Source: Mytilus edulis (lineage: Eukaryota). Taken from it: a stretch of 64,000 nt of DNA. The stretch spans positions 24,986,001 through 25,050,000 of the forward strand of contig NC_092355.1 of NCBI RefSeq assembly GCF_963676685.1. The letters are read 5' to 3'. The number at the start of each line of letters is the position of its first letter. Position 1 is the stretch's first letter. The notes beneath the pieces were generated by a model. It was given only the letters and a program-made list of their open reading frames with translations. It did no database searches and had not been told where the DNA came from. Position numbers and translations under genes: made by a program. Shown one piece after another: positions 1 through 45,400 of the stretch.

Positions 1-740
1 ACCCGTTACAGCGCTCGGTTTATACCCTGTAACTTATTCGTTCCTTAATCGCCACCAATACGCGCGGTATACGTTGCACCTTGAAATAAAACGATTATCG
101 ATTGCTTTCATGTCTCTGGTGGTAATTATGTGTTCTCTGAGTTGAAAAAACCTATTAGCACATATGTACCCATTTCACCGCTACACTGATACCCTGTTAC
201 TTATTCGTTCCTTATTCGCTTTTAAAACGTGTGTTATGCGTTGCACTTTAAAAAAGAAATATGTTTGTGTCTTTGGTGGTAACTGTCGGTTTTTAGAGGT
301 GAAATAACCCTAATAGACCATATGTACCCGTTTCAGCGCTCGACTGATACCCTGTTACTTATTCGTTCCTTATTCGCTTTAAATACGCGTGGTATACGTT
401 GCACCTTGAAATAAATCGATTATCGATTGCTTTCACGTCTCTGGTGGTAATAATGTGTTCTCTGATCTGAGTTGATTAAACCCTATTAGCGCATATGTAC
501 CCATTTCACCGCTCAGTGATACCCTGTTACTTATTCGTTCCTTATTCGCTTTTAAAACATGTGTAATGCGTTGCACTTTAAAAAAAAATATTTTTGTGTC
601 TCTGGTGGTAACTGTCGGTTCTTAGAGGTGAAATAACCTTAATCGAACATATGTACCTGTTTCAGCGCTCGACTGATACGCTGTTACTTATTCGTTCCTT
701 ATTCGCTTTAAATACGCGTGCTATGCGTTGCACCTTGAAA
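1..740 (-). repeat. Satellite array, inverted arm (~165-bp monomers alternating two variants)
   Basis: Recurrent ACCCTGTTACTTATTCGTTCCTTATTCGC...GTTGCAC...CTCTGGTGGTAA; reverse complement of the monomer at 741-3720; runs off the window start. Confidence 0.9.
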
Positions 741-3725
741 TATAAAGTAACGAATAGGTAATGAGGTATTAGCCGAGCGCTGGAACGGGTACATACGCGC
801 TAAAAGGGTTATTTCATCTCTAAGAACACATTGTTACCATCAGAGACATGAACACAAGTGAAAATCCTTTTCTAAAAGGTGCAAGGTACAATAAACGTAT
901 TTAAAGCGAATAAGTAACGAATAGGTAACAGGGTATTAACCGAGCGCTGGAACGGGTACATATGCGCTAATAGGGTCATTTCATCTCTTAGAACACATTG
1001 TTACCACCAGAGACATGGACACAATTGAAAATCCTTTTCTAAAAGGTGCAACGTACAACAAACGTATTATTAGTGAATAGGTAACGAATAGGTAACAGGG
1101 TATTATCCGAGCGCTGGAACGGGTATATACGCGCTAATAGGGGTATTTCATCTATAAGAACACATTATTACCACCAGGGATAAGAACACTATTGAAAATC
1201 CTTTTCTAAAAGGTGCAACGTACAACAAACATATTAAAAGCGAATAGGTAACGAATAGATAACGAATAGGTAACAGGGTATTAACCGAGCGCTGGAACGG
1301 GCGGGTACATGCGCGCTAATAGGATCATTTAATCTATAAGAACACATTATTACCACCAGATACATGAACACAAGTGAAAATCCTTTTCTAAAAGGTGCAA
1401 CGTACAACCAACTTATTTAAAGCGAATAAGTAACGAATAGGTAACGAATAGGTAACAGGGTATTAACCGAGCGCTGGAACGGGTACATATGCGCTAATAG
1501 GGTCATTTCATCTCTTAGAACAAACTGTTACCACCAAAGACATGAACACATTTGAAAATCTCTTTCTAAAAGGTGCAACGTACAACAAACGTATTATAAG
1601 TGAATAGGTAACGAATAGGTAACGAATAGGTAACGAATAGGTAACAGGGTATTAACCGAGCGCTGGAACGGGTACATGCGCGCTAATAGGGTCATTTCAT
1701 CTCTAAAAAAGACATTGTTACCACCAGAGATATGGACACAATTGAAAATCCTTTTCTAAAAGGTGCAACGTACAACAAACGTATTATTAGTGAATAGGTA
1801 ACGAATAGGTAACAGGGTATTATCCGAGCGCTGGAACGGGTACATACGCGCTAATAGGGGTATTTCATCTAAAAGAACACATTATTACCACCAGGGATAT
1901 GCACACAATTGAAAATCTTTTTCTAAAAGGTGCAACGAACAACAAACGTATTAAAAGCGAATAAGTAACGAATAGGTTACGAATAGGTAACGAATAGGTA
2001 ACGAATAGGTAACAGGGTATTAACCGAGCGCTTGAACGGGTACATGCGCGCTAATAGGGTCATTTAATCTCTAAAAACACATTGTAACCACCAGATACAT
2101 GGACACAATTGAAAATCCCTTTCTAAAAGGTGCAAAGTACAACAAACGTATTATAAATGAATAGGTAACGAATAGGTAACAGGGTATTAACCGAGCGCTG
2201 GAGCAGGTACATGCGCGCTAATAGGGTCATTTCATCTCTAATTACACATTGTTACCACCAGAGACATGAACACAAGTGAAAATCCTTTTCTAAAAGGTGC
2301 AACGTACAACAAACGTATTTAAAGCGAATAAGTATCGAATAGGTAACAGGGTATAAACCGAGCGATGGAACGGGTACATATGCGCTAATAGGGTTATTTC
2401 ATTTCTAAGAACACTTTGTTACCACCAGAGACATGAACACAATTGAAAATCCTTTTCTAAAAGGTGCAACGTACAACAAACGTATTATAAGTGAATAGGT
2501 AACGAATAGGTAACGAATAGGTAACGAATAGGTAACGAATAGGTAACCGGGTATTAACCGAGCGCTGGAACGGGAACATGCGTGCTAATAGGGTCATTTC
2601 ATCTCTAAGAACACATTGTTACCACCAGAGACATGGACACAATTGAAAATCCTTTTCTAAAAGGTGCAACGTACAACAAACGTATTATAAGTGAATAGGT
2701 AACGAATAGGTAACAGGGTATTAACCGAGCGCTGGAACGGGTACATGCACGCTAATAGGGTCATTTCATCTCTGATTACACATTGTTACCACCAGAGACA
2801 TGAACACAAGTGAAAATCCTTTTCTAAAAGGTGCAACGTACAACAAACGTATTTAAAGCGAATAAGTAACGAATAGGTAACAGGGTATTAACCGAGCGCT
2901 GGAACGGGTACATATGCGCTAATAGGGATATTTCATCTATAAGAACACATTATTACCACAAGAGATATGAACACAATTGAAAATTTGTTTCTTAAAGGTG
3001 CAACGTACAACAAACGTATTAAAAGCGAATAAGTAACGAATAGGTAACGAATAGGTAACAGGGTATTAACCGAGCGCTGGAACGAGTACATGCACGCTAA
3101 TAGGGTCATTTCATCTCTCATTACACATTGTTACCACCAGAGACATGAACACAAGTGAAAATCCTTTTCTAAAAGGTGCAACGTACAACAAACGTATTAT
3201 AAGTGAATAGGTAACGAATAGGTAACGAATAGGTAACAGGGTATTAACTGAGCGCTGGAACGGGTACATGCGCTCTAATAGGGTCATTTCGTCTCTAAGA
3301 ACACATTGTTACAACCAGAGACATGAACACAATTAAAAACGGTATATTTCAAGGTGCAACGTATACTTACCCCGCGCATTAAAAGCGAATAAGGAACGAA
3401 TAAGTAACAGGGTATTATCCGAGCGCTGGAACGGGTACATACGCGCTAATAGGGATATTTCATCTATAAGAACACATTATTACCACCAGAGATATGAACA
3501 CAATTGAAAATCCTTTTCTAAAAGGTGCAACGTACAACAAACGTATTAAAAGCTAATAAGTAACGAATATTTAACAGGGTATTATCCGAGCACTGTAACG
3601 GGTACATATGCGCTTATAGAGTTATATCACCTCTAAGAACCCAAATCTACCACCAGAGACAACAAAACAATTGAAAATCATGTTTCAAAAGGTGCAACGT
3701 ATGATACACGTATTATAAGCGAATT
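741..3725 (+). repeat. Satellite DNA array, ~167-bp monomer with variable internal GAATAGGTAAC 11-mer
   Basis: AAAAGGTGCAACGTACAACAAACG recurs (2292 and 2459, spacing 167); longer units differ mainly by extra 11-mers; about 16-17 copies. Confidence 0.95.
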
Positions 3726-3804
3726 ATAAGCGAGTGATGGAACGAATTAAACAAGGTAATAGCATGCTCCGAAACGATGTACACCCTGCTAACATGTTTA
3801 ACCC

Positions 3805-4105
3805 CACCACATTATGTTAGTATGTGCCTGTCCCTAGACAAGAGCCTGAAATAAGGTAGTTATCGTTTGTTTTTGTGTTACATATTTGTTTTCCGTTTAT
3901 TTTTTTGTATATGAAATACGGCCGTTAGTTTTGTTGTTTGAATTGTTTGAAATTGTCATATCAGGGCCTTTTATAGGTGACTACACGGTTTGGGCTATGC
4001 TCATTGTTGAAGGCCGTACATTGACCTATAGTTGATAGTTTCTGTGTCATTTTGGTCTATTGTGGGTTGTTGTCTCATTGGCAATCATACCACATCTTTT
4101 TTTTA
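3805..4105 (+). mobile_element. Truncated 3-prime end of Penelope-like element (same family as 46508-48549)
   Basis: Reverse-complement match to ~46510-46820 (GGCAATCATACCACATC, GCTCATTGTTGAAGGCCGTAC). Confidence 0.75.
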
Positions 4106-27874: not shown

Positions 27875-30800
27875 ACTTAAGTTTGTAATTATAGCAAAAG
27901 TTGCTGGAACATTATTTACTTATTTTATGTTTAACATTTAATATATCAGACTTGTTAGAGAAAATTAAAATACATCTATGATACAGACAAGGTGGGCGAA
28001 ATTGATTTGTGACAGACTCTGCTTTTCTTTGTAATCTAATTGATTATGCAGTTTCTACACTTTATAATTATGCAAATATTACGTCTATAATATTTTATTC
28101 AAACCATGTCAACTACCGATTAATTTTAAACATATTATGCTTACGTCTGTGGAATTTTACATGTTACCTTCAAAAAGTACATGCAATATAAATGTACACA
28201 TGAAAAGTTCCTTGATTCAGGAATTCATCTTTGAAAATAAATAAAGCTGATCGAATTACATGAAAATCTTAGATTCGAGTCTTCTGTCACAATCGCTTTT
28301 GTCCTTCTATAGGGAACTGTCAGGATTATGTAAATGTTGTCAATGAAAAGAGAAGTCTGTAGGTACCTTTTGCACCATCTGATGTACTTGAATAGAATAG
28401 CCCTGTATTCCGGTTTCTTTATTTGTTACTTGTGAGCTCGGACCTTTTTATTAAATTTTCCAGTTTAGCCTATGTAAAATCCTTGCAGTCAACACATTCA
28501 CTAATCAATACAGTATGTTCAATCTATTGATTTACATGTCATGTTTTAATTTACGAAGAATATCTGTCAACTGTGGAAATAATTTACATTGCTGGTTTCA
28601 AAGTTGTCATATTATTTGCAGCACACCCCAAGTTTTTACTGCAAATTCCTCTTTGTTCTACCAATAATAATTCTTGTCTGATTTCATTTTCCATGCTGCT
28701 GACAATTATATGTAAAGTTGTCCTTTTTAGTCAGTTCGTTCATCCTGGTACTTGGAAGGTTTGATTTCATAACGTTGAATACGTTTGTAAAGTTTGGTCC
28801 ATGACTTCATCAAACACTATCAGTTCTGTATTGTCCTATCTTTCTTTAGACATTCGGAGTTATTTATTTACGTTGTTAAGCTTAATAATTACCGTTTAAG
28901 GAGGCTCGAGGGTATACAAATTTCAGAAAAAAATAAACATTTGTTTTTTCATTACACATTTTATTTCTGACTTTATTAGTTGTTACTTTATCATATGGTA
29001 CAAAAATCATTTAAATAAAACAATTCGTTTTGGCCCCATATGACTTTTAAAATGTATATATCATTGGAAAAGCTGAAAATGATCTACCTTTGGTGCAAAA
29101 ATGCATTTTTTTGGCATTAAAATTGAAATATCTTTTTTTAACTCATCGGTGACCTATATTATCAGATTATTATTATTATTTTCAAATAAGCTTTTCTTAA
29201 ACTAAACTATTGTAAAATTTTAGAGATTTTTGTAATTTAGGTTTTTTTTCATTTAGATATTACCTCTTTTTTTAATAAGTTCAACAGTTTTAAATTCCGG
29301 TCCAGCAACGAGTGGTCAAAAAGACCTGTTAATTACAACATTTCCACAAACGTGCAGTTCATTGATTGACTACATTATGGATTTGCTTACTTGGTGGATT
29401 TTTTGTAGTTCATAAAAATGACCTTGCTTTTGGTGTAAATAACATAAATTAGCTTTTTCATGATCTGTAAGCGAGTCATCGTATATGCATGTCATCGTTT
29501 TTGTATTTCATTTTGTCGCTTTATCCGGAATTTGTGACAGTTTTTGTGGTACATTATTGATCATGAAACTGTTCTATGATCCTTTCTTTATGATAATTTC
29601 TGCCTCTTACTAGTATTATTCCATCTTGTTTTCCTTTATAAATGACAGTATAGTCATTATCTTTTATAACAGCTTGTATGCTGGGTTGTTTTTTAGGTCT
29701 CTCTAATAGATGCGTTTGTTTGCAGCTTTTAAACTAATTTGGTACTTAAAAGACTAAAGATGTGTGGTAAAATTTATCTTAAAAGGTGAATGTCTGTGCC
29801 TCCTGCTGTGCCATAAGGTAGCACTCCACAGTTAGGAAATAAAACTAAAATTGAACCACAAAATGTTTCATCATCTTCTATTCCTATTGTCTCAATTGTA
29901 ATTATACCACCTTAAGTTTGTAGTTATAGAAAAAGTTGATGGAACATTATTTACTTATTTTATGTTTAACATTCAATATATTAGACATGTTAGAGAAAAT
30001 TAAAAATACATCTATGATACAGACAAGGTGGGCGAAATTGATTTGTGACAGACTCTGCTTTCCTATGTTAATTTAATTGATTATGCAATTTCTACACTTT
30101 TTAATGATGCAAATGTTACGTCTATAATATTTTATTCCAACATTTTATTTACCGATTGATTTATAGTTATATTATGCTTACGTCTGTGGAATGTCACATG
30201 GTTCTTTCAAAGAGGACATGCAATATAAATGTATACATGAAAGGTTCCTTGATACAGGAATTGATACTTGGAAAATAAATGACCAATAACTGATAGAATA
30301 ACATGAACATAATAAAATCGAATCTTCTTTCACAAGCGCTTTTGTCTTTTTGTTGGGAACTATCAAGATTATGTAAATATTGTCAATAAAGAGAGAAGAG
30401 GAGACTATGGCTTATACCATTGTTTGTTAGGAAGTTCTGAAACTCTTGAACTAAGCGTTTATTTTTAGCTAAGGTTTAAATATCTTTATGAAATACTGTT
30501 CCATTTCATATAGGTATATTTAGAACCACCTGTTGCACTTGAAAAATGGTAATATTTTAAATGTTCCATTGACGCACGTTTCATTGTGTATTCTGAATAG
30601 AATTTGCCTGTATTTCGGATGCTATTTGTTCTTGTGAATTCGGACCCTTTCAATTAATTTTCCAGTTTGGCCTATGTAAAGTTTCTTGCAGTTAACACAT
30701 TGAATTATATTGATTTATTTTCGTTTATACATTCACGGAGTAATTCTGTCCAATGTGGAAATATTTTATACTGCCGGTCTCAAAGATAATTATCATTATG

Positions 30801-31060
30801 TGAAGCACGCACAAGTTTTACTGCAAATCACTTTTGGTTCGAATCTAATTTTAATTAGATACATTTTTTTCAATTTATAAGCTGCGGAAGCTTATAAATA
30901 TGGGAAAGCAAATTTACAGATCTAAAATTGTTGGGTTGATGTTTAGACGAGTTGTATATATATATATATATATATCAGTTCTTCCATCCTTGTACCTGGA
31001 AGGTATGATTTCATAACGTTGAATATGTTTGGTAATTTTGGTTCAAGAGTGCATACAAAT
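27875..31060. repeat. Diverged local duplication (~27875-28800 and ~29910-31060)
   Basis: Shared blocks such as ATACATCTATGATACAGACAAGGTGGGCGAAATTGATTTGTGACAGACTCTGCTTT at ~27970 and ~30006. Confidence 0.85.
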
Positions 31061-34000
31061 GAAATTGGTTCTGTGTTATCCCATTTTCCTAATGGCGTTC
31101 AATTTCATTTCCAACTCTTTCATCGAATGCTAATTATCGCCTGATTCTTGTTTTCAGGAAGCAACGGGTCTCACATTTGAAACAAAGAAAACATACATTG
31201 ATTATGTTTTAAGTAAGAATATAATTCGAATAATCAATAAATACACAACATCTACATCATGCTATAACTATGCGTGAAGATCTTTATGATATGTTATATG
31301 TTCCTTATATCGTAACTACAATCCCGTTCCGTTTTCAAGAATATGAACTACCGAATTATACTATATACCGGGTTTCTTATAAAATGACGGGTGCCACATG
31401 TGGAGCAGGATCTCCTTACCCTTCCGGTATCACCCCAAGTTTTTTTTATGGGTTCGTGTCGCTTAGTCATGTACCAAATCAATAAAATGGCAGTTGTTAT
31501 TTCATAGTTCATGTCTGTGTGTGTGTTGCTATTTCGTTGTTTGATTATTTACAATGTCCATTAAAAACAAGTGTGGCGTAAACGTCAATGAGCCGCAACT
31601 TAGCGACACGAATAACCAAAAGACATGTTCAAGTTTGATGTTAAAATAAAATGTGCGTTTTCCTCAATGAGACAGCATCCCAGCGACAAAAGGACAAGGT
31701 ATGATAAGAGGCATATTTGGCCCCCCTTTTTCCCGATTTGAGAAACTTATAAGTTGAAACCCATCCCGCTTGTGAAATGACCTATAGTATCTGTTCTTAA
31801 ACGTATCGCCTTATTTTGTTGAATTATGTTCCCAGTTTTTTGCAAAAAGAGACCTCAAAAAGGCCATGAACAACGAAAAGTGTTAAAAATCTACAATTTT
31901 GTGACGTTTGAAGACAATATTCAACATCAGCGCCAACGTAGACCATCCTGAAATAATCAACCAGCTACTCTTCTCTACTATATCTTTCATCTTATGAAAT
32001 ATCATGGTGGTCTACGTTGGCGCTCATATTTTAAATTGAAAAAAAATAAATATCCGTTTGTTTACAATTTTGACAAATCGATATAATACGGCAAATGAAC
32101 CGGTCCGGTTCCGACACTATTCCGGTAGCTAGATGCAGACGGAAAACCAAGAGTTGCTGTACCCTACCAAGCACTCTCAAGAAAATACGGGTAAGCAACA
32201 CATTTCCAACCCAAATCTTAACTACAGGCAAATAAAAAAAACTGGAATTCTGCATGTTTGCAATAAGCAATTATAAATGCAAATGTAAGTTTTATTTACG
32301 AGTCTGCCGGGCAAGTGGATCAGGCCTTGACGGCTTGAGCTTGAAAACGATTGCATTTTGTATACAAATAATACGTATCGTTGCCTGCCCTCAATAACTA
32401 GGAATATACTTTTGATAATCATATTTTGCAAGATTCAAGATGTTTCTTGTTAGAAATTCTTGTGTATGTCGCTCCTGTAGGGGGAGGGTGTCTTCTTTCT
32501 TCATTTTTAAAAAATATCTCCAGGGGTTAATAATTAATCAAAATATCAAGCATTCATAGATTTAACGTATTATCACCAAACATATTACAGATAATACGTA
32601 AGACGTGAAATTAACACAGGCTATATAAGCCCGACGCAGACGACATAGGTTTGTTTACATAATAAAAGAGTGACGTCCCCTGAAAATTGATGAATTAATT
32701 TTTCGTTTATATTTTTTTCCAACATGTAGAAATACGGTTTAAGTATGATTCATAATTGGGTTATCATTAATAAATACCTTTTTTTTTTAATTTTGAAGTA
32801 AATTGTTTAATTCAATTATTTTACTTTGAACTGGAAAATTTTATAATGTACCAGTTACGGAGATGTAGAGGCTTAAATAATAGAAGAACAAATCATATAT
32901 CGTTTCGAAAATACCGACTGTGCAAATCTGTATAGCCAGTCAAGGTCGTCAAAAACGTCCATTTTTTGTTGCTTGGTATAAAAGTGACTGTGCCAAAACT
33001 GTATAGCCAGTCCAGGCCTGATAACTTAAATAAAAAGACAATCAAGGACGTTAAAATCTTCCATGTGTTGTCGTTTTGAACCATGACCGTGCATGACGAA
33101 ATCTCAAGTTAGACACAACAAGGTCGGAGGTTAAATGACAAACTTGATATTGAATATTTAAGATGTCATGCCGGCAAATTCTGAAAAGGATAACTAAGAA
33201 AGTAAAACGCTCCCCATCCTGAAACAAACAAACAAATGTATGAAAAGTTTCGTTGCAAATGGGGAAATGAACCTGTTTTATCATTGCTTGCGTAACGTCT
33301 CACTTGTATGAAGTTGTAGTGTCTTCTATAATAAAAGTATAAAGTCTACACGCCACCAACGCAAAACGTATCTTGAGACGCACTAAGAAAAAAAATAAGT
33401 GTAACCCTTGTCCCTCCGTCCGCCACAAAATTTGTTTCCATCTCTAACTTTAGTTTTTCTCAACCAAATGATATGAAACTGATACACAATGCTTATTGCC
33501 AATAAAAACAGATCAAGTTCGAATTTGGGTGGTGTAACCCTTACTATATATATATATATAATTTACCGAAAAGGGGGGGGGGTATCATAAGTGTTCAATG
33601 AACACATGCTCCATTTAATTTAGATTGTAAGCACTCTTTCAATATTGTTGAATTTGATAAGCTGTCTTCATAAACTAAAAGTTTGTGGTTTATTTAGCAT
33701 TTCTTTTCTTATAGCTCAACTTGATAAATCCCTAAATACAAAGCCCAAAGAAGAGTATACCGGAAAAATGTAGAACTAGTTACACGTATATCCGATAGAA
33801 GATTTAGGTAAATCATACAATATCCGCTTATTTTATACCAGTGCTCATGCATTCCAAAATATATCCATTCCAACCACTTCTGCTACAGTAAATGTACAAC
33901 TCTTCGGATGTACTGCAACACTGCAACATTTATAAACTATGATTTCCGTATACTCATATAACAATATACCAGTATTCAAATGGTGCATAATCACACGGAA

Positions 34001-35094
34001 AAAAAAGTTCCGGCTTAAAGTTTAGCAGAATCATTTTCCCAATTCACTTGTAATAACAAATTATTATTAAAGAAAATGTAGATCTACTTTGCAATCTTGC
34101 AATATAATTTTTTGATAGTTTTTTTTAAAAAAGATCTCTCTTCACACAAGAAAAATAAGAAGTGATTATCTTTCGTGTTTTTCGCAGTTCTTATTTATGA
34201 TGAACACATAAAGAAATACAATTGAGACTGGAAATGGGAATAACCCGACCAAAGAGAAGACAACTAAAATTGAAAGAGAATATATAACACCCCCTCCCCA
34301 TACAAATGTAAATTGAAAGGCCTTCCACAAAGTCACCATTTTAATTAAGGGTGTATCCTAAAGGCTAAAACGAAGTGTACAAGTAACGCAATATTGTTTA
34401 GTTTTTATTTGTACATGTCATGTTTTGATTAAATACCCCAAGATCGATTATAAATTTTACGTATTGTAATGTAGTTCAAAAAGTGCTAACATTGCTACGC
34501 AAGTAGATTTTGAAACATTGTTCTTGATTTTGAAATATCAATCAAAGATTAAATTCTTACGGCCTTATCCTGTTTATTTGTTTATTTTCAAATCATTAAA
34601 GATTCATCATCAACTATAATTATGCTTTTTTTTTTTACATTTTGCAGCACTTTTGAAATTCCAGCAAGATGGTCATGATCAACAGCATTGATACATGTTA
34701 TATTGGATTCATAAAATAGGTAATTTATAAAATAAAAAATACTACATACAAAAATATACTCCTTATCTGTCCTCACAACGATTTATGTGTTCGTAGAAAC
34801 CAAAGTAGATGGTTGTGCATATATGAAAATAAGGAGTTTGGTATGATTCCCAACTAGACAACTATCCACAAAAATTCAAATGAAGTAGATTTTAACCATT
34901 ATATGAAAAAGTTGGGACTTTATCAATGAGAAAAACCCCATGTCATACAGTTGACTATACAAGGTCCAAACATAAAAAAAAATGTAAATAGACAATTGAT
35001 AAAACTAACGACCAAATCTATAACAAAACAATTATATGGTTATCATATTTATATAAAATATATACATTAACTCGGAATGTGGTATACGTTTACA

Positions 35095-36330
35095 TATAAA
35101 ATACAAGAGACAAGACAATGTAAACGAGAAAATGAACAGGAAACAATATCAGTGAGACAGGACAATGTTAACGAGACAAGAGACAAGACAATATACATGA
35201 AACGAGAAACAAAAGACAAGTACAAGACAATGAAAACAAGAGACAATATACAAGAGACAAAAGATAATGAAAACACGACAAGATACAAGAGACAATATTA
35301 ATGAGACAAGATACAAAAGAAGATGTAACCGAGACAAGATACAAGATACACGAGATAATGTAAATGACACAAGACACTAATTTAATGAGACATGACACAA
35401 GAGACATGACACATCACAATGTAAACGAGACAAGAAACAAAATACATGAAACAATGAGACCTTATTTTAATGGGACAAGACACAAAAGACATGACAATGT
35501 AAACGAGACAAAAGAGCAAGACAATGAAAACAAGAGACAATATACAAGAGACAATATTAATGAGACAAGATACAAAAAAAAATGTAAAGAAGACAAGAAA
35601 CAAAATACATGAGACAATGTTAATGTCACGATACCTCATTTAAATGAGACAAGACACAATAGACATGACAATGTAAATGAGACAAAAGAGCAAGACAACG
35701 AAAACAAAAGACAAATAACAAGAGACAAAAGACAATGAAAACAAGACTAGATACAAGGACAATGTCAATGAGACAAGATACAAAAGTCAAGATACAATTT
35801 TAATGAGACAAGACACAAGAAACATGAAACAATACAATGTAAACGAGACAAGATACAAGATACATGAGACAATGTAAATGAGACAAGACACCATTTTAAT
35901 GAGACATGACACAATAGACATGACGCATGACAATGTACACGAGACAAGAAACAAAATACATGAGACAATGTAAATGAGACAAGCCGCCATTTTAATGAGA
36001 CAAGACACAAAAGACATGACAATGTAAACGAGACAAAAGACAAGTGACTCGACAATATGTATTAGACAAGAGACAAACGGAAATAGAAACGGGACAAGAT
36101 ACAAGGTAAACAAGACATGATACAGGCTGCAAAAGACAATGTACACCGGGACAAGAAACACAAGACAGTGCACAAGTAACTGTATTCATGTGACGATATA
36201 CAATGTAAATGAGACAAGAAACAAAAGACAATGTACACGAAACAAGATACAATGGACAAGAGAAGACAATGGGACCGAGACAAGATACAAACAGCAATGT
36301 AAACAAGACAAGAGACAAAAGACAGTTAAA
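35095..36330 (+). repeat. Degenerate ACAAG/GACAA low-complexity tandem array inside the transposon
   Basis: Strongly strand-biased GAGACAAGA/ACAATGTAAA units; source of many spurious ORFs. Confidence 0.9.
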
Positions 36331-36397
36331 CCAGGTGATGCAAGCAAATATGTATATGAAATATTTTTTATTTTTTATTTTATTTAGCCACATAGCT

Positions 36398-38475
36398 ATG
36401 GCTAAAAATTACAGTTGTGGTCTCTGCAAAAAGACGCATTTAACAGTCAAAAACAGAAGAACAATAGTAAATGAAAAAATAATAGATTATCTGGCCAAAA
36501 CTCTTAAAAGGAATATTGATAATGCAACTACATGTATATGCTTGCAATGCAGGGCACAAATATACCGGGATATGAAAGACTAGGTACAACTTGCCAGCCA
36601 AACGATGATGATGATCCAGATTTTTTGGCAGAAGAAATATTACCAACAGAACTGATAAGCCCCAAATCTATACAGTTAAACCTTTCATCTACATCTAAAT
36701 CTCATAGACGTTGTACTGTTTGTCAGAAAAATAGTAGTAATCGACATCGACAGGTAGTTGTACCACATGAGGCTCGAACTCAGGCTTTCATTGACAAATG
36801 TATCGTTATACCAGCAAATAGCAGATGTTGTCCCAATCATCTTTTGGGAAACTATTTTACACAAGAGTCTATTTCAAAGATACCAGAAGTAAATAACACT
36901 ACACTTTTTAATAGAAGTGACATCACTGATCTATTAGACAGGGTTCGAGGAACATTGACATTAAATGGCAAACTTAACTTTGACTGTGTACACTCATTGT
37001 CAGAGGAGGACTACCAAAGACTGACTGGTTTAACAAGAAATCAGTTCGAAGCTGTTGCAAATACAGTTACTGACCTCAGGAAATCTGAAATAAGATCTGT
37101 AAAGACATGTTTGGCCATCCTTTTAGTTAAACTAAGGACTGGACTTTCAAATTCAATTTTAGCAACATTATTCTCATTAGAAATACACCAAATTCAAAGA
37201 GCGACGCATGCTGCTAGATCCTCTTTGATGAAGTCATTTGTGCCAAAGTTTCTTGGCTTTCAACATATGTCCCACGAGAAGTTCACTAGAGACCACACCA
37301 CTCCAACAGCAAGAACTTTGTTTGCAGATGATCAACAAGAGACTGGTATTCTTGTCCTTGATGGGACTTATATCTACCTACAGAAAAGTTCCCACCATCA
37401 TTTTCAAAAGCAGACATACAGTATGCATAAAGGGAGATCCTTAGTAAAGCCCATGATGATTGTTGCAACAGACGGGTATATTTTAAATGTCCTCGGCCCA
37501 TATTATGCTGATGGTCATAACAATGATGCTTCTATCATTAAGCATGTATTTAAGACTAATGCTGACGAAATTAACACATGGATGCACGATGATGATGTCA
37601 TGGTTGTAGATAGAGGCTTTCGTGATGCGGAAGAATTTTTGAAAAAATTAAATTTCAAAGTTGAGATGCCTTGTTTTCTAAAGAAAGGTGCAAAGCAGCA
37701 AACAGTCGATGAAGCGAATACCACTCGACTTGTAACTAAAGTGCGCTGGGTAGTGGAAAGTGCAAACGGCAGAATCAAACAGTGGAAATTTTTAGATAAA
37801 GTTGTTGCCAACCACTACGTTCCAACCATTGGGGACTTTGTACGAATTGTATGCGCTCTTGTTAACTGTTTTAGGCCGCCTCTCATAAATGATTTTGGCA
37901 ATGATGATATAGGAAAAGAAATGATTGAAAAGGCTCAATTAGACAACCATGTCATACTATATGTAGAGGAGCACAACCTTCTGAGAAGAAAAACTGTATA
38001 CAAGGAAGTTGATGGTGCAACTGAGCTTATCATGTTCCCAAGGATATCTCTAGACCATCTGAGACAAATTACTATGGGTATTTACCAAATTAAGTTAGCT
38101 AAAAGGTATACAGATGCCCATCAGGAGGACGACAACTATGCATTGTACATTTGCAAGGATAGGCCAGATCTGTTGCGAGTAAAAATGCAGTCTCGCCATT
38201 CATCTTCTAGATGCTATCATTTGTGGTTGGAGTACGATGAGAATGATGTCAGTGGGTGGTATTGTACATGTAAAGTTGGGTCACGTATGGTCGGGTGTTG
38301 TGCTCACATCGCCAGCGTTGTTTGGTATCTTGGATATCAGAAGTGGAATATTGAGGCTGCTCAATCTGTCAATGCTTCCGGAAAGTTTTCAAGTTCCATA
38401 CTCAATGCTAAAGATGTTCCTGAAGAGTCTGACATGTCTGACGTAGAAAGTGTTGATTCATATGTAGAAGAATGA
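36398..38475 (+). CDS. DDE transposase (Harbinger/IS5-like, DDE_Tnp_4-type) with N-terminal Cys zinc finger and C-terminal SWIM finger; one frameshift at ~36575
   Basis: Long ORF 36532..38475 with VLDGTYIY, VVDRGF, RWVVESANGRIK catalytic motifs, HTH-like LVKLRTGLSN..LATLF, SWIM CTCKVGSRMVGCCAH; upstream frame from ATG 36398 has CGLC...CLQC. Confidence 0.9.
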
Positions 38476-40212
38476 CATTAACAAACTCCTCGCAACTGTT
38501 TTTGTTTATTCATAAGATGTTTATTGCTGTTATAATCTAAATTAAAAGAAGGGTTCACATTCCATATGTCATCACATTTATATAATTGTTCTTAAAAAAC
38601 ACGTTTTTTAACCACAAGACTTATTTTGTATGAACTTGTAACGTAAGACGTGGAAGACTAGATTTTTTTTTCTTCAATTTTTTCAATTTTCCGCTTTGTT
38701 TACACATGTTTTTTTTAACTCCAAGCACTTGATAATACACATGTGACTTTGTTTAACTCAGGAATTTGTTGTGTTTGGTCACGTGTGTCGTGTAATTCTG
38801 TCAATTTTCTTTATTACTATTGGTAACAAAATTAACATAATGTTAAAGCACGTTAAGATATCTAATCAATTTGTAGAGTTTTAGTAGAATATTTCATACA
38901 AAGTACATTGTTATAATTGTTTGCAGTTGTGACTACCGGAGACCTAGTGTGTTAATTTCAAGAAATCTAGCAATATAATATTTTTTTAGAGAAAAATGTA
39001 ATAGTTCTAGGAGGTCGCCCTTTTTATGCATTTTCCCTATATGAAGTGTGGACGAACACTGAACTTTGCAAACTTTTTTATGCATTTAAAATGTCCCTGT
39101 AATTGATTTAGTTCCCTAACAGATAAAAAAACGAATTCTAGAAGCAACACACATTTGTTACAGAATACTTTGTGATCCCCTTCTCATTTGTCAATAGCAT
39201 TTTTAGACGTTTTGTGTTTTAATGAAGTCGAATATTCTCCTCTGTATATGCTTTAGCTGGACGCCAGTATAATAGTTACTGAAAAAGTTATAATTGAACT
39301 GACTTTTTGATTTCTATCAAGTCTTTTATACAGAACTAGAAAATCGGATGAGTAGATATGTGTACAATGAAAATAGTAGTTGTCTTAAATTTAAACCTGA
39401 TTGATAGTTGCTTATAACATTTGTGTTGCAATGCAATATATAGACTTCTCAAAAAAAAAGTATTGATAAAGATATCAATACTTTAGTGTACTCAATGCGA
39501 AAGAAAGTTTTTAAAAAACACCAAAAACTCATGCTTGGGATTAAACAAAAGAATCATTATTAAACCGTTGCTAGGCACTATTTTTTTTTATTGAAATGTT
39601 GTTGATATATATGAACTTCAATGCAATTCATTTTATTTCTTACAGTTATTTGTTTTCATATGAAATCATTTTGTTTTTATTTACAATAAAATGATTGTGC
39701 TCACATTTCTTTTAAATTATCATTTTGTGTCTGTTGCTAAGCAATATTTGTGTTGCTATGGTCGATATCAACATCCATATAAAGAATAGTGATGACTGAT
39801 CGATCATATCAGTCTTAAAACCAGTTTAGATTTAAAATCTACAAATATTGCTATTTTTGTATATCCCAGAGGGAAAAACTAACCAAACTTTGAACTGTTG
39901 CTAGGCAACAATCTTGTTGCTAAGTTGTTGCTAAGCATTTTAATTTACTGAAATTTAACGTGAACATTCGTTCGTAACTTCAGGTTCCTATAAAGTGAAC
40001 AATAGCATTTAAAATTGAGATCATTTGTTTAGATAATACTGTCCATAAGAGATAATTTGGCTTTTTAATAAAACCGTTGCTAGGCAACCATCCCCTGACC
40101 AGAACATAAAAAAATCATTGTTTTATCAAGTTTCTATACAAAGGCTATCAATGATATGAATATAAGCTCATTTTGAGAGGGGGCCAAAAACACCCCTTAT
40201 CATACCTTGTCC

Positions 40213-42415
40213 TTTATGTATAAATGAACTAATCACTTGACTCATGCTACCAACTATTTTTTTCTCTCGATTTTTGGGGTATTTCCCGGTAAATAAAATT
40301 ACTGTTCGCATGCACTAGTTAATACTGATGAAAGTGGCATTAACGCTAAAAGTCGATAAAATCCATCATTGTTTATTTCAGACGATCATTGGTTTGTTAA
40401 ACAAGAATCTTTTAACTTGATTTGTTATTTCACCATAGGAATGTTTTGCATCACAAACTTGTTACTATAATTTTTGCATTATGTCTGTAATATTTGCCGC
40501 TTTGACGTTTACGCCACACTTGTTTTTAATGGACATTGTAAATAATCAAACATGCAGTTAAGGTGTTATTTCATATCTGATACAAGATGAAGAGAAGATA
40601 AAGGGACCTAAGAGGAAATGGAAGAAATGGTCTTATTAAAAAAAAATGATGTATTTGATCTTTCGTATTTCGGTTGTCTATAAATATAGTTCCTGACATT
40701 TGGATGAATGTCAACTATAAGAACTGTGTCTTTTAGGTGGGAAACCAATGGCTTAAAATGATAAGTTATGTATTTCTTTTATACGGAAGATAATCATCAT
40801 TTTTTAAACATAATGTTTTTTACAGATGCATTGTGAATTTCGGTGTCAGATTTGTATGGATGGCAAATCTTTCTATTTAACAAATGAAATAGAAAATCGT
40901 AGGTTAAAAATTAAATGCAACTTTTCCAATGTGTCTATTGACTCCATTTAAATATCTTAGCAGTTCAAATATGTTAACAGTCGAGTATATGTCAAGATGC
41001 TCTAGGGAATTGCAACCTTTTTCTTCATTTAGTAACTGTATACCTCAAATGAGTGAAGCCAAAACAAATTCTTCACCGGGAACTCCAGAGCTGAAACATG
41101 AAGACTTCAGTTTAGCAGGGATTTAAATCTAAGGCTAGTTTTTGGTCATTTTTGCACATAGGAACTTTACAGAAACAGTTAGTGTGAAACAGTTGTGCTT
41201 CACGGCGACATGTCTTCTTAACTACAGAATGATGCATTGAAATAGAGACTGCACGATACATTTACAGAATTTTTGAAATTCTTCGACAAATAAAATACCC
41301 TTTCATTTTAAAAATAAACATTCTATATCTAATGGTGTCGACCTAAAGTTGCAAGACAAGTTTACCTTAACTTTGAAAAGTTTAACTTAGTATAGAATTA
41401 TAAACAAAAGGTAAACTGTGGTGGACACAAGAACCTTAGAAAGCAGTTCCTACCTATATTGTTAAGTCCTTCCAACCTTTTAAAACAACTTTTTTAAGTC
41501 CTTTTTTTTTTCTTTAAAAAAATTTTAATTAGCGTTTTCATCATACTCAGGGATTAAAAGTATCTTTACTAAGAGGTATCGACGAAATCATTAAATTCCC
41601 TGAAACTGCTTCAATACCAGCGGCAACTATTACAGTCATAATGCACAAATTATAGCAACAAGTTTGTGATGCAAAACATTGCTCTAGTGAAATAACGATT
41701 CAAGTTAACACATTCTTGTTTACAAAACCAATGATCGGTGTAGAACACGTCTGAAATAAACAATGATGGATTTATTTAATGCCACTTTCATCTGTATTAA
41801 CTATTGCATGCGAACAGTATTTTTTATTAGCGATAAATACCCCAAAAATCGAGAAAAACATAAATATTTGGTAGCATGAGTCAAGTGAATAGTTCATTTA
41901 TACACATATTTTGTTGCTGGGATGTTGTCTCATTGAGGGAAACTCACATCTCTTTTTAACGTCGAACTTACACATGTCTTTTGGTTATTGGTATCGCTAG
42001 GGTGCGGCTTATTGACGTTTTCGCCACACTTGTTTTTGATAGACATTGTAAATTTTCAAACATACAGTTACGGTGATAATTCATATCTCATACAAGATGA
42101 AGAGAAGATAAAAGGACCTAAGAGATAAAAAGAAGAAACGATTTTATTTAAAACAAAAATGACCTGTTTGGTCGCTCGTATTTCGGTTGTCTATAAATAT
42201 AGTTCCTGTCATTTTGATGACTGTAAACTATAAGTACTGTGTCTTTTAGGTGGACATCAATGGCTAAAAATTATTAGTTATGCTATTTCTTTTATAGGGA
42301 AGATTATCATCATTTGTTAAACATTATGTTTTCTTCAGATGCACTGTGGATTTAATTGTAAGATTTGTATGGATGGCGAATCTGTCTATTTAACAAATAA
42401 AATAAAAAATTTCAG
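40213..42415. repeat. Local duplication with internal inversion (40213-40500 inverted vs 41620-41908; 40502-40900 direct vs 42013-42410)
   Basis: Direct sequence comparison of shared blocks. Confidence 0.85.
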
Positions 42416-45400
42416 TAAAAGCAGGTAAATTAGTCCATAGAAATAATATACAATTACTGTCTCTTGAAGAGGTAGATATGCAGTTTTATTAACTTTTGGA
42501 AAAAAAAACTGATATTCACTTAAACCGATACACCGCAGTGAATATCAGTTTCAGTTTTCCGAAAGTTTAGTAATGGGGGGTTCACACATTGCCAATTATT
42601 GCTATTGTTTGAGATCAGACAGCGATACGACACGAAAAGTGAAAAAGTCGGATTACTATCCTCAATTATCTGGAATGTCCTATTATTGTCTGAACGCAGT
42701 CGTTTAAGTTCGTAACAGATTCCCAAGGGTCGGGAAGGGTCCGGATAGTTCGGCAAAGCATCCCGACAGTTAGATGCGTCCTGTAACATTCGGGGAAACT
42801 CAGCCGATTTTGTCTAGCAAGATTACAATCGTGCCTATGTCGTAACAGATTCTGCTGTATCGGAACGATTTCCTAACAAGGTTCTGGGTATTCTGGACGG
42901 TGTCCTCTGGAACGAGACTGATCTGGAGAAATTTTTCATTGCTGTTTTTCTGCCGATTGAGCCCAGATGGCATCCAGATCTTGTCGATTGCGAACCGTTT
43001 TTGCAGAAACCGTTCCGAAACAGTTCCGTTATTATTTAGGGGTAGTCTTGTGTGCTGACAAGCATGTTTGAACACACCACATGCATTTTGTGCAAATCAG
43101 GACCCGTAGTTAAATGATTGTCGTTTGTTGCTGTCATATTTGATTTTAGTTTATTGTTTAAGGGTATGCCATAATAAGGATTAATTATCTATGAAAATGT
43201 TAACTAACCCTACGGTTAAGCATTTGAAAGTCAAAGTTGTTATCATCTCGTCATATGATCGCTGGAGGATAATTGTCTCATTGGCAATCATAAAGAAAAT
43301 TTGCGCCAAATTTTTGTCGTGTTAATGAACGGCAATATGTTGACAATTTTGCAAGTATTCTGGCATCAAAGTTAATCTTAAAAATGAAAAGCGTATTTGA
43401 ATTCACAATTGAATGGTCCACATATAGGCTCATCTACCTGTAAAAGATATAATCATTATCTTGTTACTAAATTTGTAAAATGATGTATCCTAAAAGTGTG
43501 TGTTATCTTAACAGTAACATAAATTATATTGTAAACATGTAGCTATAACGAATTTAAATGAGCGAATGAAAAATTCAGAGTGTCAACTAACCATAAGTTT
43601 TCAACTAAATTATAAAACTTAACAGTACTTTGATTCCACATGTTCCATAAAACCCATGTGCCAAAAAAAAATATATTGTTCGGATGTATGTTTATATTAT
43701 TTCATAAAGGGGACATTCCCTTGATAAAGAGCGTTACGGATACGCAGCTAGAATGCGTCACTTTGTTTTGCTTTAAAACATACTTTGATTTCATTTCAAG
43801 ATTAAGATGGAATTAAATGAAAATATCATTATCCTTGACTTCACAGATTTTACTTAATAAATACTGCTGGACCCATAACTTCATAATAAGAACAATAATG
43901 TATGATGGTATTTTAAATGCAATTCTTCTCATCAGAAGACTTACTGAATTGAAATTACTGTATTATAAGAGAGATTTAACACATTCAATTATATGTCCTA
44001 AATATGAATCGCAGAATCTATCCGTACTAATCATGTTATTATTTAAAGTATTGTAATATCACAAATTATAAGGATGTTACCTTAGTTCCCTCTAATTGCT
44101 GAATGATATTTCATAGTTATGTATAAAATAGTGAGATGTGCAATGATAAAAAGACGTTGATATTAGTAGTTTATAGGGTACCGTACATTCCTCTATAGTA
44201 AACAAAATCAATACTGTGAAGTCAGACATAGAAGGCCCGGGGATGTCAAAATGTAAATATATCCGAACGAAAAAACAAACGGCCTGATTTATCATGTTTA
44301 TGAAAATAGCTATAAACGGAAAACGGATATTACAGACTATCCATGGATGTAAGTACCTCTTCATGACAATGATTAAGTAGAGATTGTTCTCAACATTGAT
44401 GTTTTGTTTCAAAACTAAATATATGTAAGTCTTTCTAAAGAAAATATCTTTTATCATGCAATTTTTAACCGCAAATGGATTTGGTTATTTCATGTTATGT
44501 GCCCCCTTTCAGTCAAATAGCTCACATATCAGTCAAGTAGTTATGCAGTGACATTGTTTTTTAGGTTTATGAACTTCTGATCAAGGTAATCGAGAAAAGA
44601 GACTCGGGCAAATACAATTTGGAGTGTTATTTTCATTAACTATCAAAAAAAAAAAAATATTTTTTAAGTATTAATATACGAAAAAATATTGTGCGCATAA
44701 AGCCCCAATTACTATTCTAGGTACAGTCCCTGTCTAAAAATAAATAAAAAAACCAACTGAAAATGAGCTTTCAATACATTGACAAAACTAAACATAAAAA
44801 GGTGGCTTTGAAAGGTAGAAAATAACCACAGTTACTGTAAACTATGTTTAATTAATTTATATATATATGTATGCTTTTTAACTGTTGTATTGACCGCTTG
44901 TAAACGTCAGTGAATGTCATACATTTAGTGTTTTCATGTATATATATATTCTTATCATATATAAAAATATAAAGATGTGGTATGATTGCCAATAATGCAA
45001 CCCTCCACCAGATACTAAAATGACATAGAAGTTAACAACTATATGTCACCGTACAACATTCAGCAATTAGCAAAACTCATACCACGAAGTCATCTATAAA
45101 AGGCCCCGAAATGACAAACGTAAAACAAATGTGAAAACTAATGGCTTGATTTATATACAAAACAATGAACGAAAACAAATATGATATACAACAAAAAACG
45201 ACAATTACTGATTTACAAGTATAATACATAAAGTGGCGAGTTTTAAAAATTTTGCAGGCGTCCAACCTTCCCCCTTACCTGGTACAATGGTGTAACAGTA
45301 CAACATAGGAGCAAACTATAAAAAATCAATTGAAAAGGTGTTAACTCAAATCGATGCAAAGCAGAAAAACAAGTAGCACATAACATAGACCGGACGTTTT

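What the first reader, a model, noticed from the sequence alone, without database searches (positions are those of the whole stretch)
31692..40212. 8.5-kb DDE-SWIM transposon inserted without target-site duplication, shown by an empty site in the same window
Seen: removing the TIR-bounded element gives CATCCCAGCGACAAAA|TTTATGTATAAATGAACT. The uninterrupted paralogue (reverse complement of 41891-41924) reads CATCCCAGCAACAAAA TATGTGTATAAATGAACT, the same length, so no bases were duplicated. Known: AAA|TTT targeting with no TSD is the hallmark of Spy elements, whereas PIF/Harbinger make 3-bp and ISL2EU 2-bp TSDs. Here the transposase has Harbinger/ISL2EU-like motifs (DGTY, DRGF, RxxVExxxGRIK) fused to a SWIM finger, and I see no second Myb/SANT or YqaJ gene. 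Inference: a blunt-cutting PHIS-group lineage with a distinctive single-protein architecture.
Basis: partly seen in the sequence, partly recalled or inferred. Interest (0 to 1): 0.8.

Follow-up and report, generated by a model that had tools for sequence, protein, structure and literature searches.

The report
Spy-type DNA transposon in a mussel

Summary
Window 31692-40212 is an 8,521-bp element with 34-nt imperfect inverted ends (GGACAAGG...). It sits in a 1.54-kb tandem repeat. After removing it, the flanks have the same length as 76 of 76 uninterrupted repeat units.

Other copies in this Mytilus genome are flanked by AAA (25 of 29 left ends) and TTT (29 of 30 right ends), with no duplication. 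For a 3.5-kb non-autonomous relative, a contig from another sequencing run joins AAA directly to TTT with no shared bases. That is a precise empty site.

The interpretation as a distinctive new lineage is not supported. The AAA|TTT target, absent TSD, GGANNNNG terminus and single ORF of about 700 aa with an N-terminal HTH are the published definition of Spy (PMC4122938). TSD-free integration has been shown experimentally, including activity of an oyster element (PMC11304231).

The SWIM-like CxCx9CxH motif is real and nearly invariant in 102 relatives from bivalves, insects and rotifers, so it is family-wide. 'SWIM' does not occur in the main text of three Spy/PHIS papers.

The window copy is damaged. 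A 25-nt deletion puts its N-terminal CxxC...CxxC module out of frame.

I could not run a phylogeny against named Spy sequences.

The parts
31692..40212 (+). Whole Spy-type element, 8,521 bp.
   Evidence: Termini. The same termini occur at 29 other left ends and 29 other right ends in the genome.
31689..31691 (.). Host AAA, the left half of the target.
   Evidence: All 76 empty repeat units carry AAAA here. 25 of 29 left flanks genome-wide are AAA.
31692..31725 (+). 5' terminal inverted repeat. It starts GGACAAGG, which fits GGANNNNG.
   Evidence: I6.
33396..33545 (.). Short high-copy repeat nested in, or shared with, the 5' non-coding region.
   Evidence: query positions 1267-1416 match many unrelated loci at 77-88%.
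34821..35035 (.). Second short high-copy repeat in the 5' region.
   Evidence: query positions 2692-2906 match many loci at 74-79%.
35109..36307 (+). Degenerate minisatellite built on the heptamer GAGACAA.
   Evidence: It holds 27 of the 28 plus-strand GACAAG hexamers of the element.
36398..36580 (+). N-terminal CxxC...CxxC module (61 codons, MAKNYSCGLC...CLQCR...). It is out of frame with the main ORF.
   Evidence: The module is in frame in relatives P0008, P0095 and P0097 and in the C13 copy.
36575..36576 (+). Point where this copy lacks 25 nt that are present in the 98%-identical copy on contig 13. This causes the frameshift.
36532..38475 (+). Main transposase ORF, 647 aa from an internal ATG.
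   Evidence: 99% identical to a Mytilus edulis protein, P0001.
36712..36840 (+). C2CH module, C61-x2-C64-x35-C100-x2-H103, with THAP-like spacing.
   Evidence: C61, C64 and C100 are in 102 of 102 sequences and H103 in 101 of 102. No Pfam THAP match.
37117..37215 (+). HTH_Tnp_4-like helix-turn-helix.
   Evidence: E = 0.025 in this ORF. 11 of 15 relatives match at E <= 0.01.
37357..37866 (+). DDE_Tnp_4 catalytic core with D277, D360 and E409.
38230..38331 (+). SWIM-like finger, C578-x-C580-x9-C590-x-H592.
   Evidence: Pfam E = 0.0017, below the cut-off. The cysteines are in 102 of 102 sequences and H592 in 99 of 102. The model places the CxC pair at the end of a strand and the CxH pair at the start of helix 591-601.
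40179..40212 (-). 3' terminal inverted repeat.
   Evidence: I6.
40213..40215 (.). TTT, the right half of the target.
   Evidence: 29 of 30 right flanks genome-wide are TTT. The empty units of this repeat read TAT here.
31538..31691 (+). Left part of the interrupted 1.54-kb host repeat unit.
   Evidence: I1.
40216..40501 (+). Right part of the interrupted host repeat unit.
   Evidence: I2, I3, I5.
41619..42062 (-). Uninterrupted inverted paralogue of the host repeat. The empty site lies between 41909 and 41908.

Best explanation

Its transposase is about 700 aa when full length. From N to C terminus it has a CxxC...CxxC module, a C2CH module, an HTH, a DDE_Tnp_4 core and a SWIM-like finger.

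The inferred mechanism runs as follows. The transposase binds the GGACAAGG... termini. It cuts flush at both ends. It then joins the two 3'-OH ends to directly opposite phosphodiester bonds in the middle of a palindromic AAATTT target. No gap is left to be filled, so no target-site duplication arises.

Shown here: the anatomy, the AAA|TTT flanks, the absence of any duplication, and precise empty sites. Inferred: the zero-stagger chemistry, and any role of the zinc modules.

This particular copy inserted into a unit of a 1.54-kb tandem repeat. It has since lost 25 nt, which puts the N-terminal module out of frame, so it is probably not autonomous. Related non-autonomous elements of 3.4-4.7 kb share its termini. 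At least one of them is absent at its site in another sequencing data set.
For: 1. Paralogous empty sites. 76 of 76 uninterrupted host units have exactly the length of the filled site minus the element.

2. A precise empty site elsewhere. On L091, a 3,482-bp family member, an X15 contig joins position 400 to 3883, skips 3,482 nt with skipped ends GG..CC, and shares 0 letters between the two sides. Two X23 raw reads run from position 400 into TTTTACGAAAAGATCAA, which equals the right flank.

3. Flank tallies. AAA at 25 of 29 left ends and TTT at 29 of 30 right ends. 0 of 12 paired rows (11 elements) show a direct repeat beyond AAA/TTT.

4. The terminus GGACAAGG fits the published Spy consensus GGANNNNG (PMC4122938, section 11).

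5. One long ORF and no second gene.

6. DDE_Tnp_4 at 8.6e-20 and a weak HTH_Tnp_4 match.

7. Spacing of D(82)D(48)E here, and D(80)D(48)E in the Magallana gigas relative P0082. The published range is D(79-80)D(44-62)E.

8. Relatives at 40-72% identity over about 90% of the length occur in bivalves (including oysters), a gastropod, Hymenoptera, Lepidoptera, Hemiptera and bdelloid rotifers. These are broadly the host groups reported for Spy.

9. Published Spy transposases are about 700 aa from one ORF. cgSpy integrates without a TSD in human cells (PMC11304231, sections 2.2 and 2.6).
Against: No named Spy, ISL2EU or Harbinger reference sequence was available, so clade membership rests on features and not on a tree.

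The first D-D spacing is 82, not the published 79-80.

The filled site reads AAA|TTT, but all 76 paralogous empty units read AAA|TAT. One base therefore has to be explained by a substitution specific to that unit.

The 2014 paper states that most Spy transposases appear to have no zinc finger, whereas this family has three invariant Cys/His modules. That could be a detection failure, because Pfam also misses them at its cut-offs. It could also mean a separate branch.

At 8.5 kb the element exceeds the published 1,165-5,910 bp range for intact Spy.

The second protein search did not bring up the insect species named in the Spy papers.
Confidence: 0.87

Rival explanations
1. A separate, undescribed PHIS lineage. 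It would have converged on AAA|TTT insertion without a TSD and would be marked by the DDE-SWIM fusion.
For: 'SWIM' occurs 0 times in the main text of three Spy/PHIS papers. The 2014 paper says most Spy transposases show no zinc finger. The D-D spacing is 82 against the published 79-80. The named species of the Spy papers, other than the Pacific oyster, did not appear in the top 120 hits of either protein search.
Against: Every structural hallmark of Spy is met, including the GGANNNNG terminus. The oyster relative P0082 has the published D(80) spacing. The size and single-ORF plan match published Spy. The SWIM-like motif scores below Pfam's cut-off, so the domain searches used in those papers would probably have missed it.
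Confidence: 0.08
2. An ISL2EU or PIF/Harbinger element whose AAA and TTT are the outermost bases of its own inverted repeat, with a short duplication lost or unrecognised.
For: AAA...TTT extends the inverted repeat by 3 nt (I6). Repbase once filed the oyster Spy elements as ISL2EU (PMC4122938, section 11). The C2CH module has THAP-like spacing, and ISL2EU carries a THAP domain.
Against: The empty alleles keep AAA and T.T or AAATTT (with 0 shared letters). The triplets therefore belong to the host. 0 of 12 paired rows show a repeat beyond AAA/TTT. There is no YqaJ or Myb/SANT ORF.
Confidence: 0.02
3. The apparent empty sites are products of precise excision, not sites that were never occupied. 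In that case they would say nothing about the insertion chemistry.
For: Spy excision footprints are not described in the passages I read.
Against: 76 of 76 tandem-repeat units have the same length and the same AAAATAT sequence. Their uniformity across arrays on several contigs indicates an ancestral state and not 76 separate excisions. Even under precise excision, the filled site still has no duplicated bases.
Confidence: 0.03

Closest known systems
[quoted passage not shown]
   Same: AAA|TTT target with no TSD. GGANNNNG terminus. A single transposase ORF of about 700 aa with an N-terminal HTH and a DDE_Tnp_4 core. Invertebrate hosts, including bivalves.
   Different: The host genus Mytilus is not named in the passages I read, and no paper in the library holds both 'Spy transposon' and 'Mytilus'. 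The length is 8.5 kb against the published maximum of 5.9 kb for intact elements. The D-D spacing is 82 against 79-80. The three conserved Cys/His modules are not mentioned in the main texts.
ISL2EU.
   Same: Related DDE_Tnp_4 core. Reported as the sister clade of Spy. Its N-terminal THAP finger is a C2CH finger, like the module here.
   Different: ISL2EU makes a 2-bp TSD and carries a second, YqaJ-exonuclease ORF. Neither is present here. Pfam THAP does not match.
PIF/Harbinger.
   Same: DDE_Tnp_4 core and HTH_Tnp_4. Preference for AT-rich targets.
   Different: Harbinger makes a 3-bp TSD and needs a second Myb/SANT protein. Neither is present here.
SWIM fingers of MULE/MuDR transposases and FAR1/FHY3 (recalled, not tested here).
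   Same: A CxCxnCxH motif placed C-terminal to a DDE transposase core.
   Different: The catalytic core belongs to a different superfamily. The match to Pfam SWIM stays below the gathering score in every member scanned.

Membership tests
Spy (PHIS superfamily) | Insertion between host AAA and TTT, with no duplication or loss of target bases. | tested here: met
   76 of 76 paralogous empty units have equal length. A precise empty-site joint 400->3883 shares 0 letters between its two sides. AAA at 25 of 29 left ends and TTT at 29 of 30 right ends. Caveat: the empty units of this particular repeat read TAT, not TTT.
Spy (PHIS superfamily) | TIR with the terminal consensus 5'-GGANNNNG-3'. | tested here: met
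   GGACAAGG at both ends of the window copy. In the listing, most other left ends start the same way and a minority differ by one to three bases.
Spy (PHIS superfamily) | A single long ORF encoding the transposase, with no second gene. | tested here: met
   One 647-aa ORF, about 700 aa in intact relatives. No Pfam match better than E = 0.034 in 9 other ORFs.
Spy (PHIS superfamily) | D(79-80)D(44-62)E spacing. | tested here: inconclusive
   D(82)D(48)E here. Among 102 relatives the spacings are 80-82 and 45-48. The oyster relative P0082 has D(80)D(48)E.
Spy (PHIS superfamily) | HTH motif N-terminal to the catalytic core. | tested here: met
   HTH_Tnp_4 at E = 0.025 at residues 196-228. 11 of 15 relatives match at E <= 0.01. 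Helices are predicted there.
Spy (PHIS superfamily) | Placement inside the Spy clade in a DDE-core phylogeny. | not testable with these tools
   No named Spy, ISL2EU or Harbinger sequences could be obtained.
ISL2EU | 2-bp TSD. | tested here: not met
ISL2EU | Second ORF with a YqaJ exonuclease domain. | tested here: not met
ISL2EU | N-terminal THAP zinc finger. | tested here: inconclusive
   An invariant C-x2-C-x35-C-x2-H is present. No Pfam THAP match was found: window ORF to E 0.1, 15 members to E 0.01, 10 members to E 10. The Atlas lead to Lin-15B scored only 0.76.
PIF/Harbinger | 3-bp TSD and a second Myb/SANT ORF. | tested here: not met
SWIM zinc finger (PF04434) | CxCxnCxH signature and a score above the Pfam gathering score. 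| tested here: inconclusive
   The signature is present, with the cysteines in 102 of 102 sequences and the histidine in 99 of 102. The Pfam score is 18.3 bits against a 19.6-bit cut-off. Weak matches at the same place occur in 4 of 15 members at E <= 0.01 and in 8 of 10 at E <= 10. UniProt names some relatives 'SWIM-type domain-containing protein'.

The most novel reading that the evidence does not exclude
All Spy transposases carry three conserved zinc-binding modules that the Spy literature has overlooked. These are an N-terminal CxxC...CxxC module, a THAP-like C2CH finger shared by descent with ISL2EU, and a C-terminal SWIM finger. The SWIM finger would be required for assembling the symmetric complex that joins both ends without stagger at AAATTT.
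Probability: 0.3. Interest if true: 0.4.

Novelty: new member of a known kind. Interest (0 to 1): 0.25.

Why it matters
The practical value is modest.

It adds Mytilus to the hosts of Spy. Spy is the only eukaryotic cut-and-paste group known to insert without a target-site duplication, and it is now being developed as a gene-transfer tool.

It shows that mussel genomes hold several diverged Spy families. In one search, 18 of 74 matches were near full length without stop codons. At least one non-autonomous relative is absent at its site in another data set, which suggests recent activity.

The invariant C2CH and SWIM-like modules give concrete residues to mutate in the published cgSpy and cvSpy assays.

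It does not change what is known about how such elements work.

Tried and rejected
Structure and profile searches. A profile of 15 relatives against PDB sequences gave 0 matches at E <= 10. The AlphaFold2 model (pLDDT 85.9) searched with Foldseek against PDB gave nothing at E <= 0.001. The best rows were Mos1 (2.2e-3), the SETMAR transposase domain and HIV intasomes. That fits an RNase-H-like DDE core, but nothing identifies the small zinc modules.

ESM Atlas. Residues 41-135 gave only a 0.76 lead to a Lin-15B cluster, which is below the level that counts.

THAP. No Pfam THAP match was found. The window ORF was scanned to E 0.1, 15 members to E 0.01 and 10 members to E 10.

RNA families. Rfam on 29000-45000 gave 0 matches, so the host repeat is not a known RNA gene array.

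Link to published Spy species. A second protein search with the ant relative P0097 was meant to reach those species. It returned the same family and no species named in the Spy papers apart from Magallana gigas.

The 64%-identical intact family. I looked for its 5' terminus in 2.6 kb upstream of the ORF on contig 14 and found none. Its ends therefore remain unknown.

Rejected idea: AAA/TTT are part of the TIR with a TSD beyond them. 0 of 12 paired rows show such a repeat.

Rejected as unsupported: the internal GAGACAA minisatellite as a transposase-binding array. GACAAG occurs once in each TIR and otherwise almost only inside the minisatellite. None lies in the subterminal regions.

Literature. 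'SWIM' has 0 occurrences in the main texts of PMC4122938, PMC4482050 and PMC11304231. 'SWIM' together with 'ISL2EU' occurs in 2 papers. I saw only their titles and abstract openings in the listing, and neither concerns transposase domains. 'SWIM' with Harbinger, transposase and zinc finger gave 5 papers, none about PHIS SWIM fingers by title. 'Spy transposon' with 'Mytilus' gave 0 papers. Supplementary tables of the Spy papers were closed. These include domain table S3 of the 2014 paper and Table S1 of the 2024 paper. They may list domains or Mytilus elements that I could not see.


Full report
**What is there.**
The window comes from a 1.37-Gb genome in 2,368 contigs. The best protein match is 99% identical to a Mytilus edulis entry, so the genome is a Mytilus mussel.

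At 31692-40212 lies an 8,521-bp element. Its ends form a 34-nt imperfect inverted repeat with 30 of 34 matches. The tool reports 37 nt at 89% when the flanking AAA/TTT are included. The left flank ends in ...GCGACAAAA and the right flank begins TTTATGTAT...

The element interrupts one unit of a 1.54-kb tandem repeat. That repeat forms long arrays on contigs 12, 5 and 2, with 575 first-look candidates. An uninterrupted, inverted unit lies 1.7 kb downstream in the window.

**Is there a duplication?**
I took 30 loci of the host repeat and cut out the segment between two anchors on either side of the site. All 76 segments found are 45 nt long. The loci overlap, so some units are counted more than once.

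The interrupted unit is 28 + 17 = 45 nt once the element is removed. Nothing was duplicated or lost.

All 76 empty units read ACAAAA|TATATG, while the filled unit reads ACAAAA|TTTATG. The AAA and two of the three T are therefore host bases. The middle T differs from every empty unit.

The simplest account is a substitution in that one unit. The two units in the window differ by 11-14%. A TAT-to-TTT change would have created the preferred AAATTT target. I cannot show this, so it stays a small open point.

**Other copies.**
Searches with the terminal 209 nt of each end returned 40 scored matches each, from 89 and 254 first-look candidates. Among the fetched loci:
- 25 of 29 distinct left ends are preceded by AAA.
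- 29 of 30 right ends are followed by TTT.
- Positions further out are variable.

Twelve left-right pairings could be made, representing 11 elements of 2.4-11.5 kb. One element has an internal duplication and so gives two left ends. None has a direct repeat beyond AAA/TTT. One pairing, on contig 11, has TTT on both sides.

**An empty site from other sequencing data.**
I fetched a 3,482-bp non-autonomous member with 400 nt of flank on each side (L091). It has no ORF of 70 aa or more inside the element. I laid four public runs on it.

- One contig of run X15 joins position 400, the last A of AAA, to position 3883, the first T of TTT. It skips exactly 3,482 nt whose ends are GG..CC. No letter is shared between the two sides.
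- Two raw reads of run X23 run from position 400 into TTTTACGAAAAGATCAA, which is the right flank. They then diverge.
- Flank depth is low in the raw-read runs, as expected for single-copy DNA at about 1.4-fold sampling.

This is one contig with 30 nt on its shorter side, plus two reads. It agrees with the paralogous evidence that AAATTT is uninterrupted host sequence at the empty site.

**The protein.**
The 647-aa ORF (36532-38475) matches DDE_Tnp_4 (8.6e-20), DDE_Tnp_1, HTH_Tnp_4 (0.025) and SWIM (0.0017; 18.3 bits, below the 19.6-bit cut-off). The catalytic residues are D277, D360 and E409, which gives D(82)D(48)E.

Intact relatives are 670-726 aa. They begin with a CxxC...CxxC module that the 647-aa ORF lacks. 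In the window that module sits in another frame at 36398-36580.

The 98%-identical copy on contig 13 has both parts in one frame. Compared with it, the window copy lacks 25 nt between 36575 and 36576. The window copy is therefore damaged.

The contig-13 copy is itself broken further on. Its matches come in three pieces, with about 2.4 kb between the last two.

The annotated M. edulis protein P0001 starts in the minisatellite ORF and skips the zinc module. That looks like a gene-model artefact around the same deletion.

**Conservation.**
In an alignment of 102 relatives at 39-72% identity:
- The DDE triad is invariant, with spacings of 80-82 and 45-48.
- C61, C64 and C100 are present in 102 of 102 sequences, and H103 in 101 of 102.
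- The SWIM-like C578, C580 and C590 are present in 102 of 102, and H592 in 99 of 102.

These relatives come from many bivalves, a vent gastropod, an ant, a parasitoid wasp, a butterfly and bdelloid rotifers. A whitefly and a mealybug also appeared.

The AlphaFold2 model (mean pLDDT 85.9) places the CxC pair at the end of a four-stranded sheet region (537-578) and the CxH pair at the start of helix 591-601. As I recall the original description of SWIM, that is a strand-then-helix layout of the same kind. This is recall and not a test.

Pfam SWIM matches stay below the gathering score in every member scanned. THAP never matches.

**The rest of the element.**
No other gene was found. Outside the transposase there are only minisatellite ORFs and nine ORFs of 50-79 aa with no meaningful Pfam match.

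The 3-kb stretch 32130-35090 recurs in full in the contig-13 copy (98%). It recurs in parts, at 81-92%, in copies on contigs 6, 8 and 4. It is therefore part of the family and not a later insertion. Two short stretches inside it are high-copy repeats.

A 1.2-kb degenerate GAGACAA minisatellite lies just upstream of the gene.

The family proper has about six copies at 88% identity or more. None has a full undamaged ORF in this assembly.

The abundant non-autonomous elements share only about 430 nt at the left end and about 500 nt at the right end with it, at 74-77% identity.

**Comparison with what is known.**
Han et al. 2014 (PMC4122938; abstract, sections 11-13 and passages read) define Spy by four traits:
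- insertion at AAA|TTT without a TSD;
- a single long ORF with D(79-80)D(44-62)E;
- an N-terminal HTH;
- variable TIRs ending in GGANNNNG.

They list Crassostrea gigas among the hosts. They also already propose blunt, non-staggered joining.

Han et al. 2015 (PMC4482050; passages read) place Spy beside PIF/Harbinger, ISL2EU, Pangu and Nuwa. The last four all make TSDs, and most have two ORFs.

Diaby et al. 2024 (PMC11304231; sections 2.1, 2.2, 2.6 and passages read) report the following:
- 182 Spy elements, 4 of them in molluscs;
- transposases of about 700 aa from a single ORF;
- intact elements of 1,165-5,910 bp;
- transposition activity of a bee element and an oyster element in human cells;
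- 8,810 mapped cgSpy integrations without a TSD, about 60% of them at the consensus motif.

The element here meets every structural criterion. The one exception is the first spacing, 82 instead of 79-80, and the oyster relative has 80.

**What I could not do.**
There is no tree against named references. Membership in the Spy clade therefore rests on the defining features, the size and the host range. It does not rest on phylogeny.

**Verdict.**
The thing is a Spy transposon, so it is a new member of a known kind and not a new lineage.

The one point that may be new in print is that the family carries invariant C2CH and SWIM-like modules and an N-terminal CxxC pair. These are absent from the main texts I searched, and they contradict the 2014 remark that most Spy transposases have no zinc finger.

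**Earlier findings of this scan.**
The look-up by place returned two notes on unrelated genes elsewhere in the window. The look-up by words returned nothing. Neither affected this reading.

Noticed in passing
window 31538-31691, 40216-42410; arrays at G000 C12:59.78-59.81 Mb, C12:65.93-65.95 Mb, C5:64.78-64.79 Mb, C2:37.48 Mb: The host sequence is a 1.54-kb tandem repeat with hundreds of units (575 first-look candidates). It has no Rfam match and no long ORF. In the window, two units lie in inverted orientation.
   Followed up: partly
window 35109-36307: A 1.2-kb degenerate minisatellite built on GAGACAA lies inside the element, just upstream of the transposase gene. It contains 27 copies of the hexamer GACAAG, which also lies in each TIR. 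The contig-13 copy is about 520 nt longer between its left end and the gene, which may reflect a length difference in this array. I did not check that.
   Followed up: partly
protein P0001 (Mytilus edulis entry), corresponding to window 36209-38475: The public gene model starts in a minisatellite ORF and splices past the CxxC...CxxC module into the main frame. That looks like an annotation artefact around the 25-nt deletion.
   Followed up: partly
L091 (G000 C5:68081196-68084677) and about 11 paired copies listed: A non-autonomous family of 3.4-4.7 kb without ORFs has nearly identical Spy termini (254 first-look candidates for the right end). One copy is absent at its site in another run's contig, which suggests recent mobility.
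   Followed up: partly
L091 3004-3146: A stretch of about 140 nt inside the non-autonomous element has 10-40 times the read depth of its surroundings, and thousands of reads run on into unrelated sequence. It is a very abundant short repeat nested there.
   Followed up: no
G000 C14:2633161-2634963, C11:22126958-22128760, C6:60264596-60266398 and 14 further places: At least 17 further near-full-length Spy-like ORFs without stop codons occur at 42-64% identity to the window protein, in several families of 596-721 aa open frames. The mussel genome therefore holds a diverse and possibly active Spy population. The ends of these families were not found.
   Followed up: partly
window 33396-33545 and 34821-35035: Two short high-copy repeats of about 150 and 215 nt lie inside the element's 5' non-coding region. 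They match dozens of unrelated loci at 74-88%, some of them in tandem clusters.
   Followed up: no
protein P0138: A 431-aa fragment of this animal transposase family is filed under a bacterial symbiont bin (Candidatus Thiodiazotropha endolucinida). It probably reflects host contamination of that metagenome bin.
   Followed up: no
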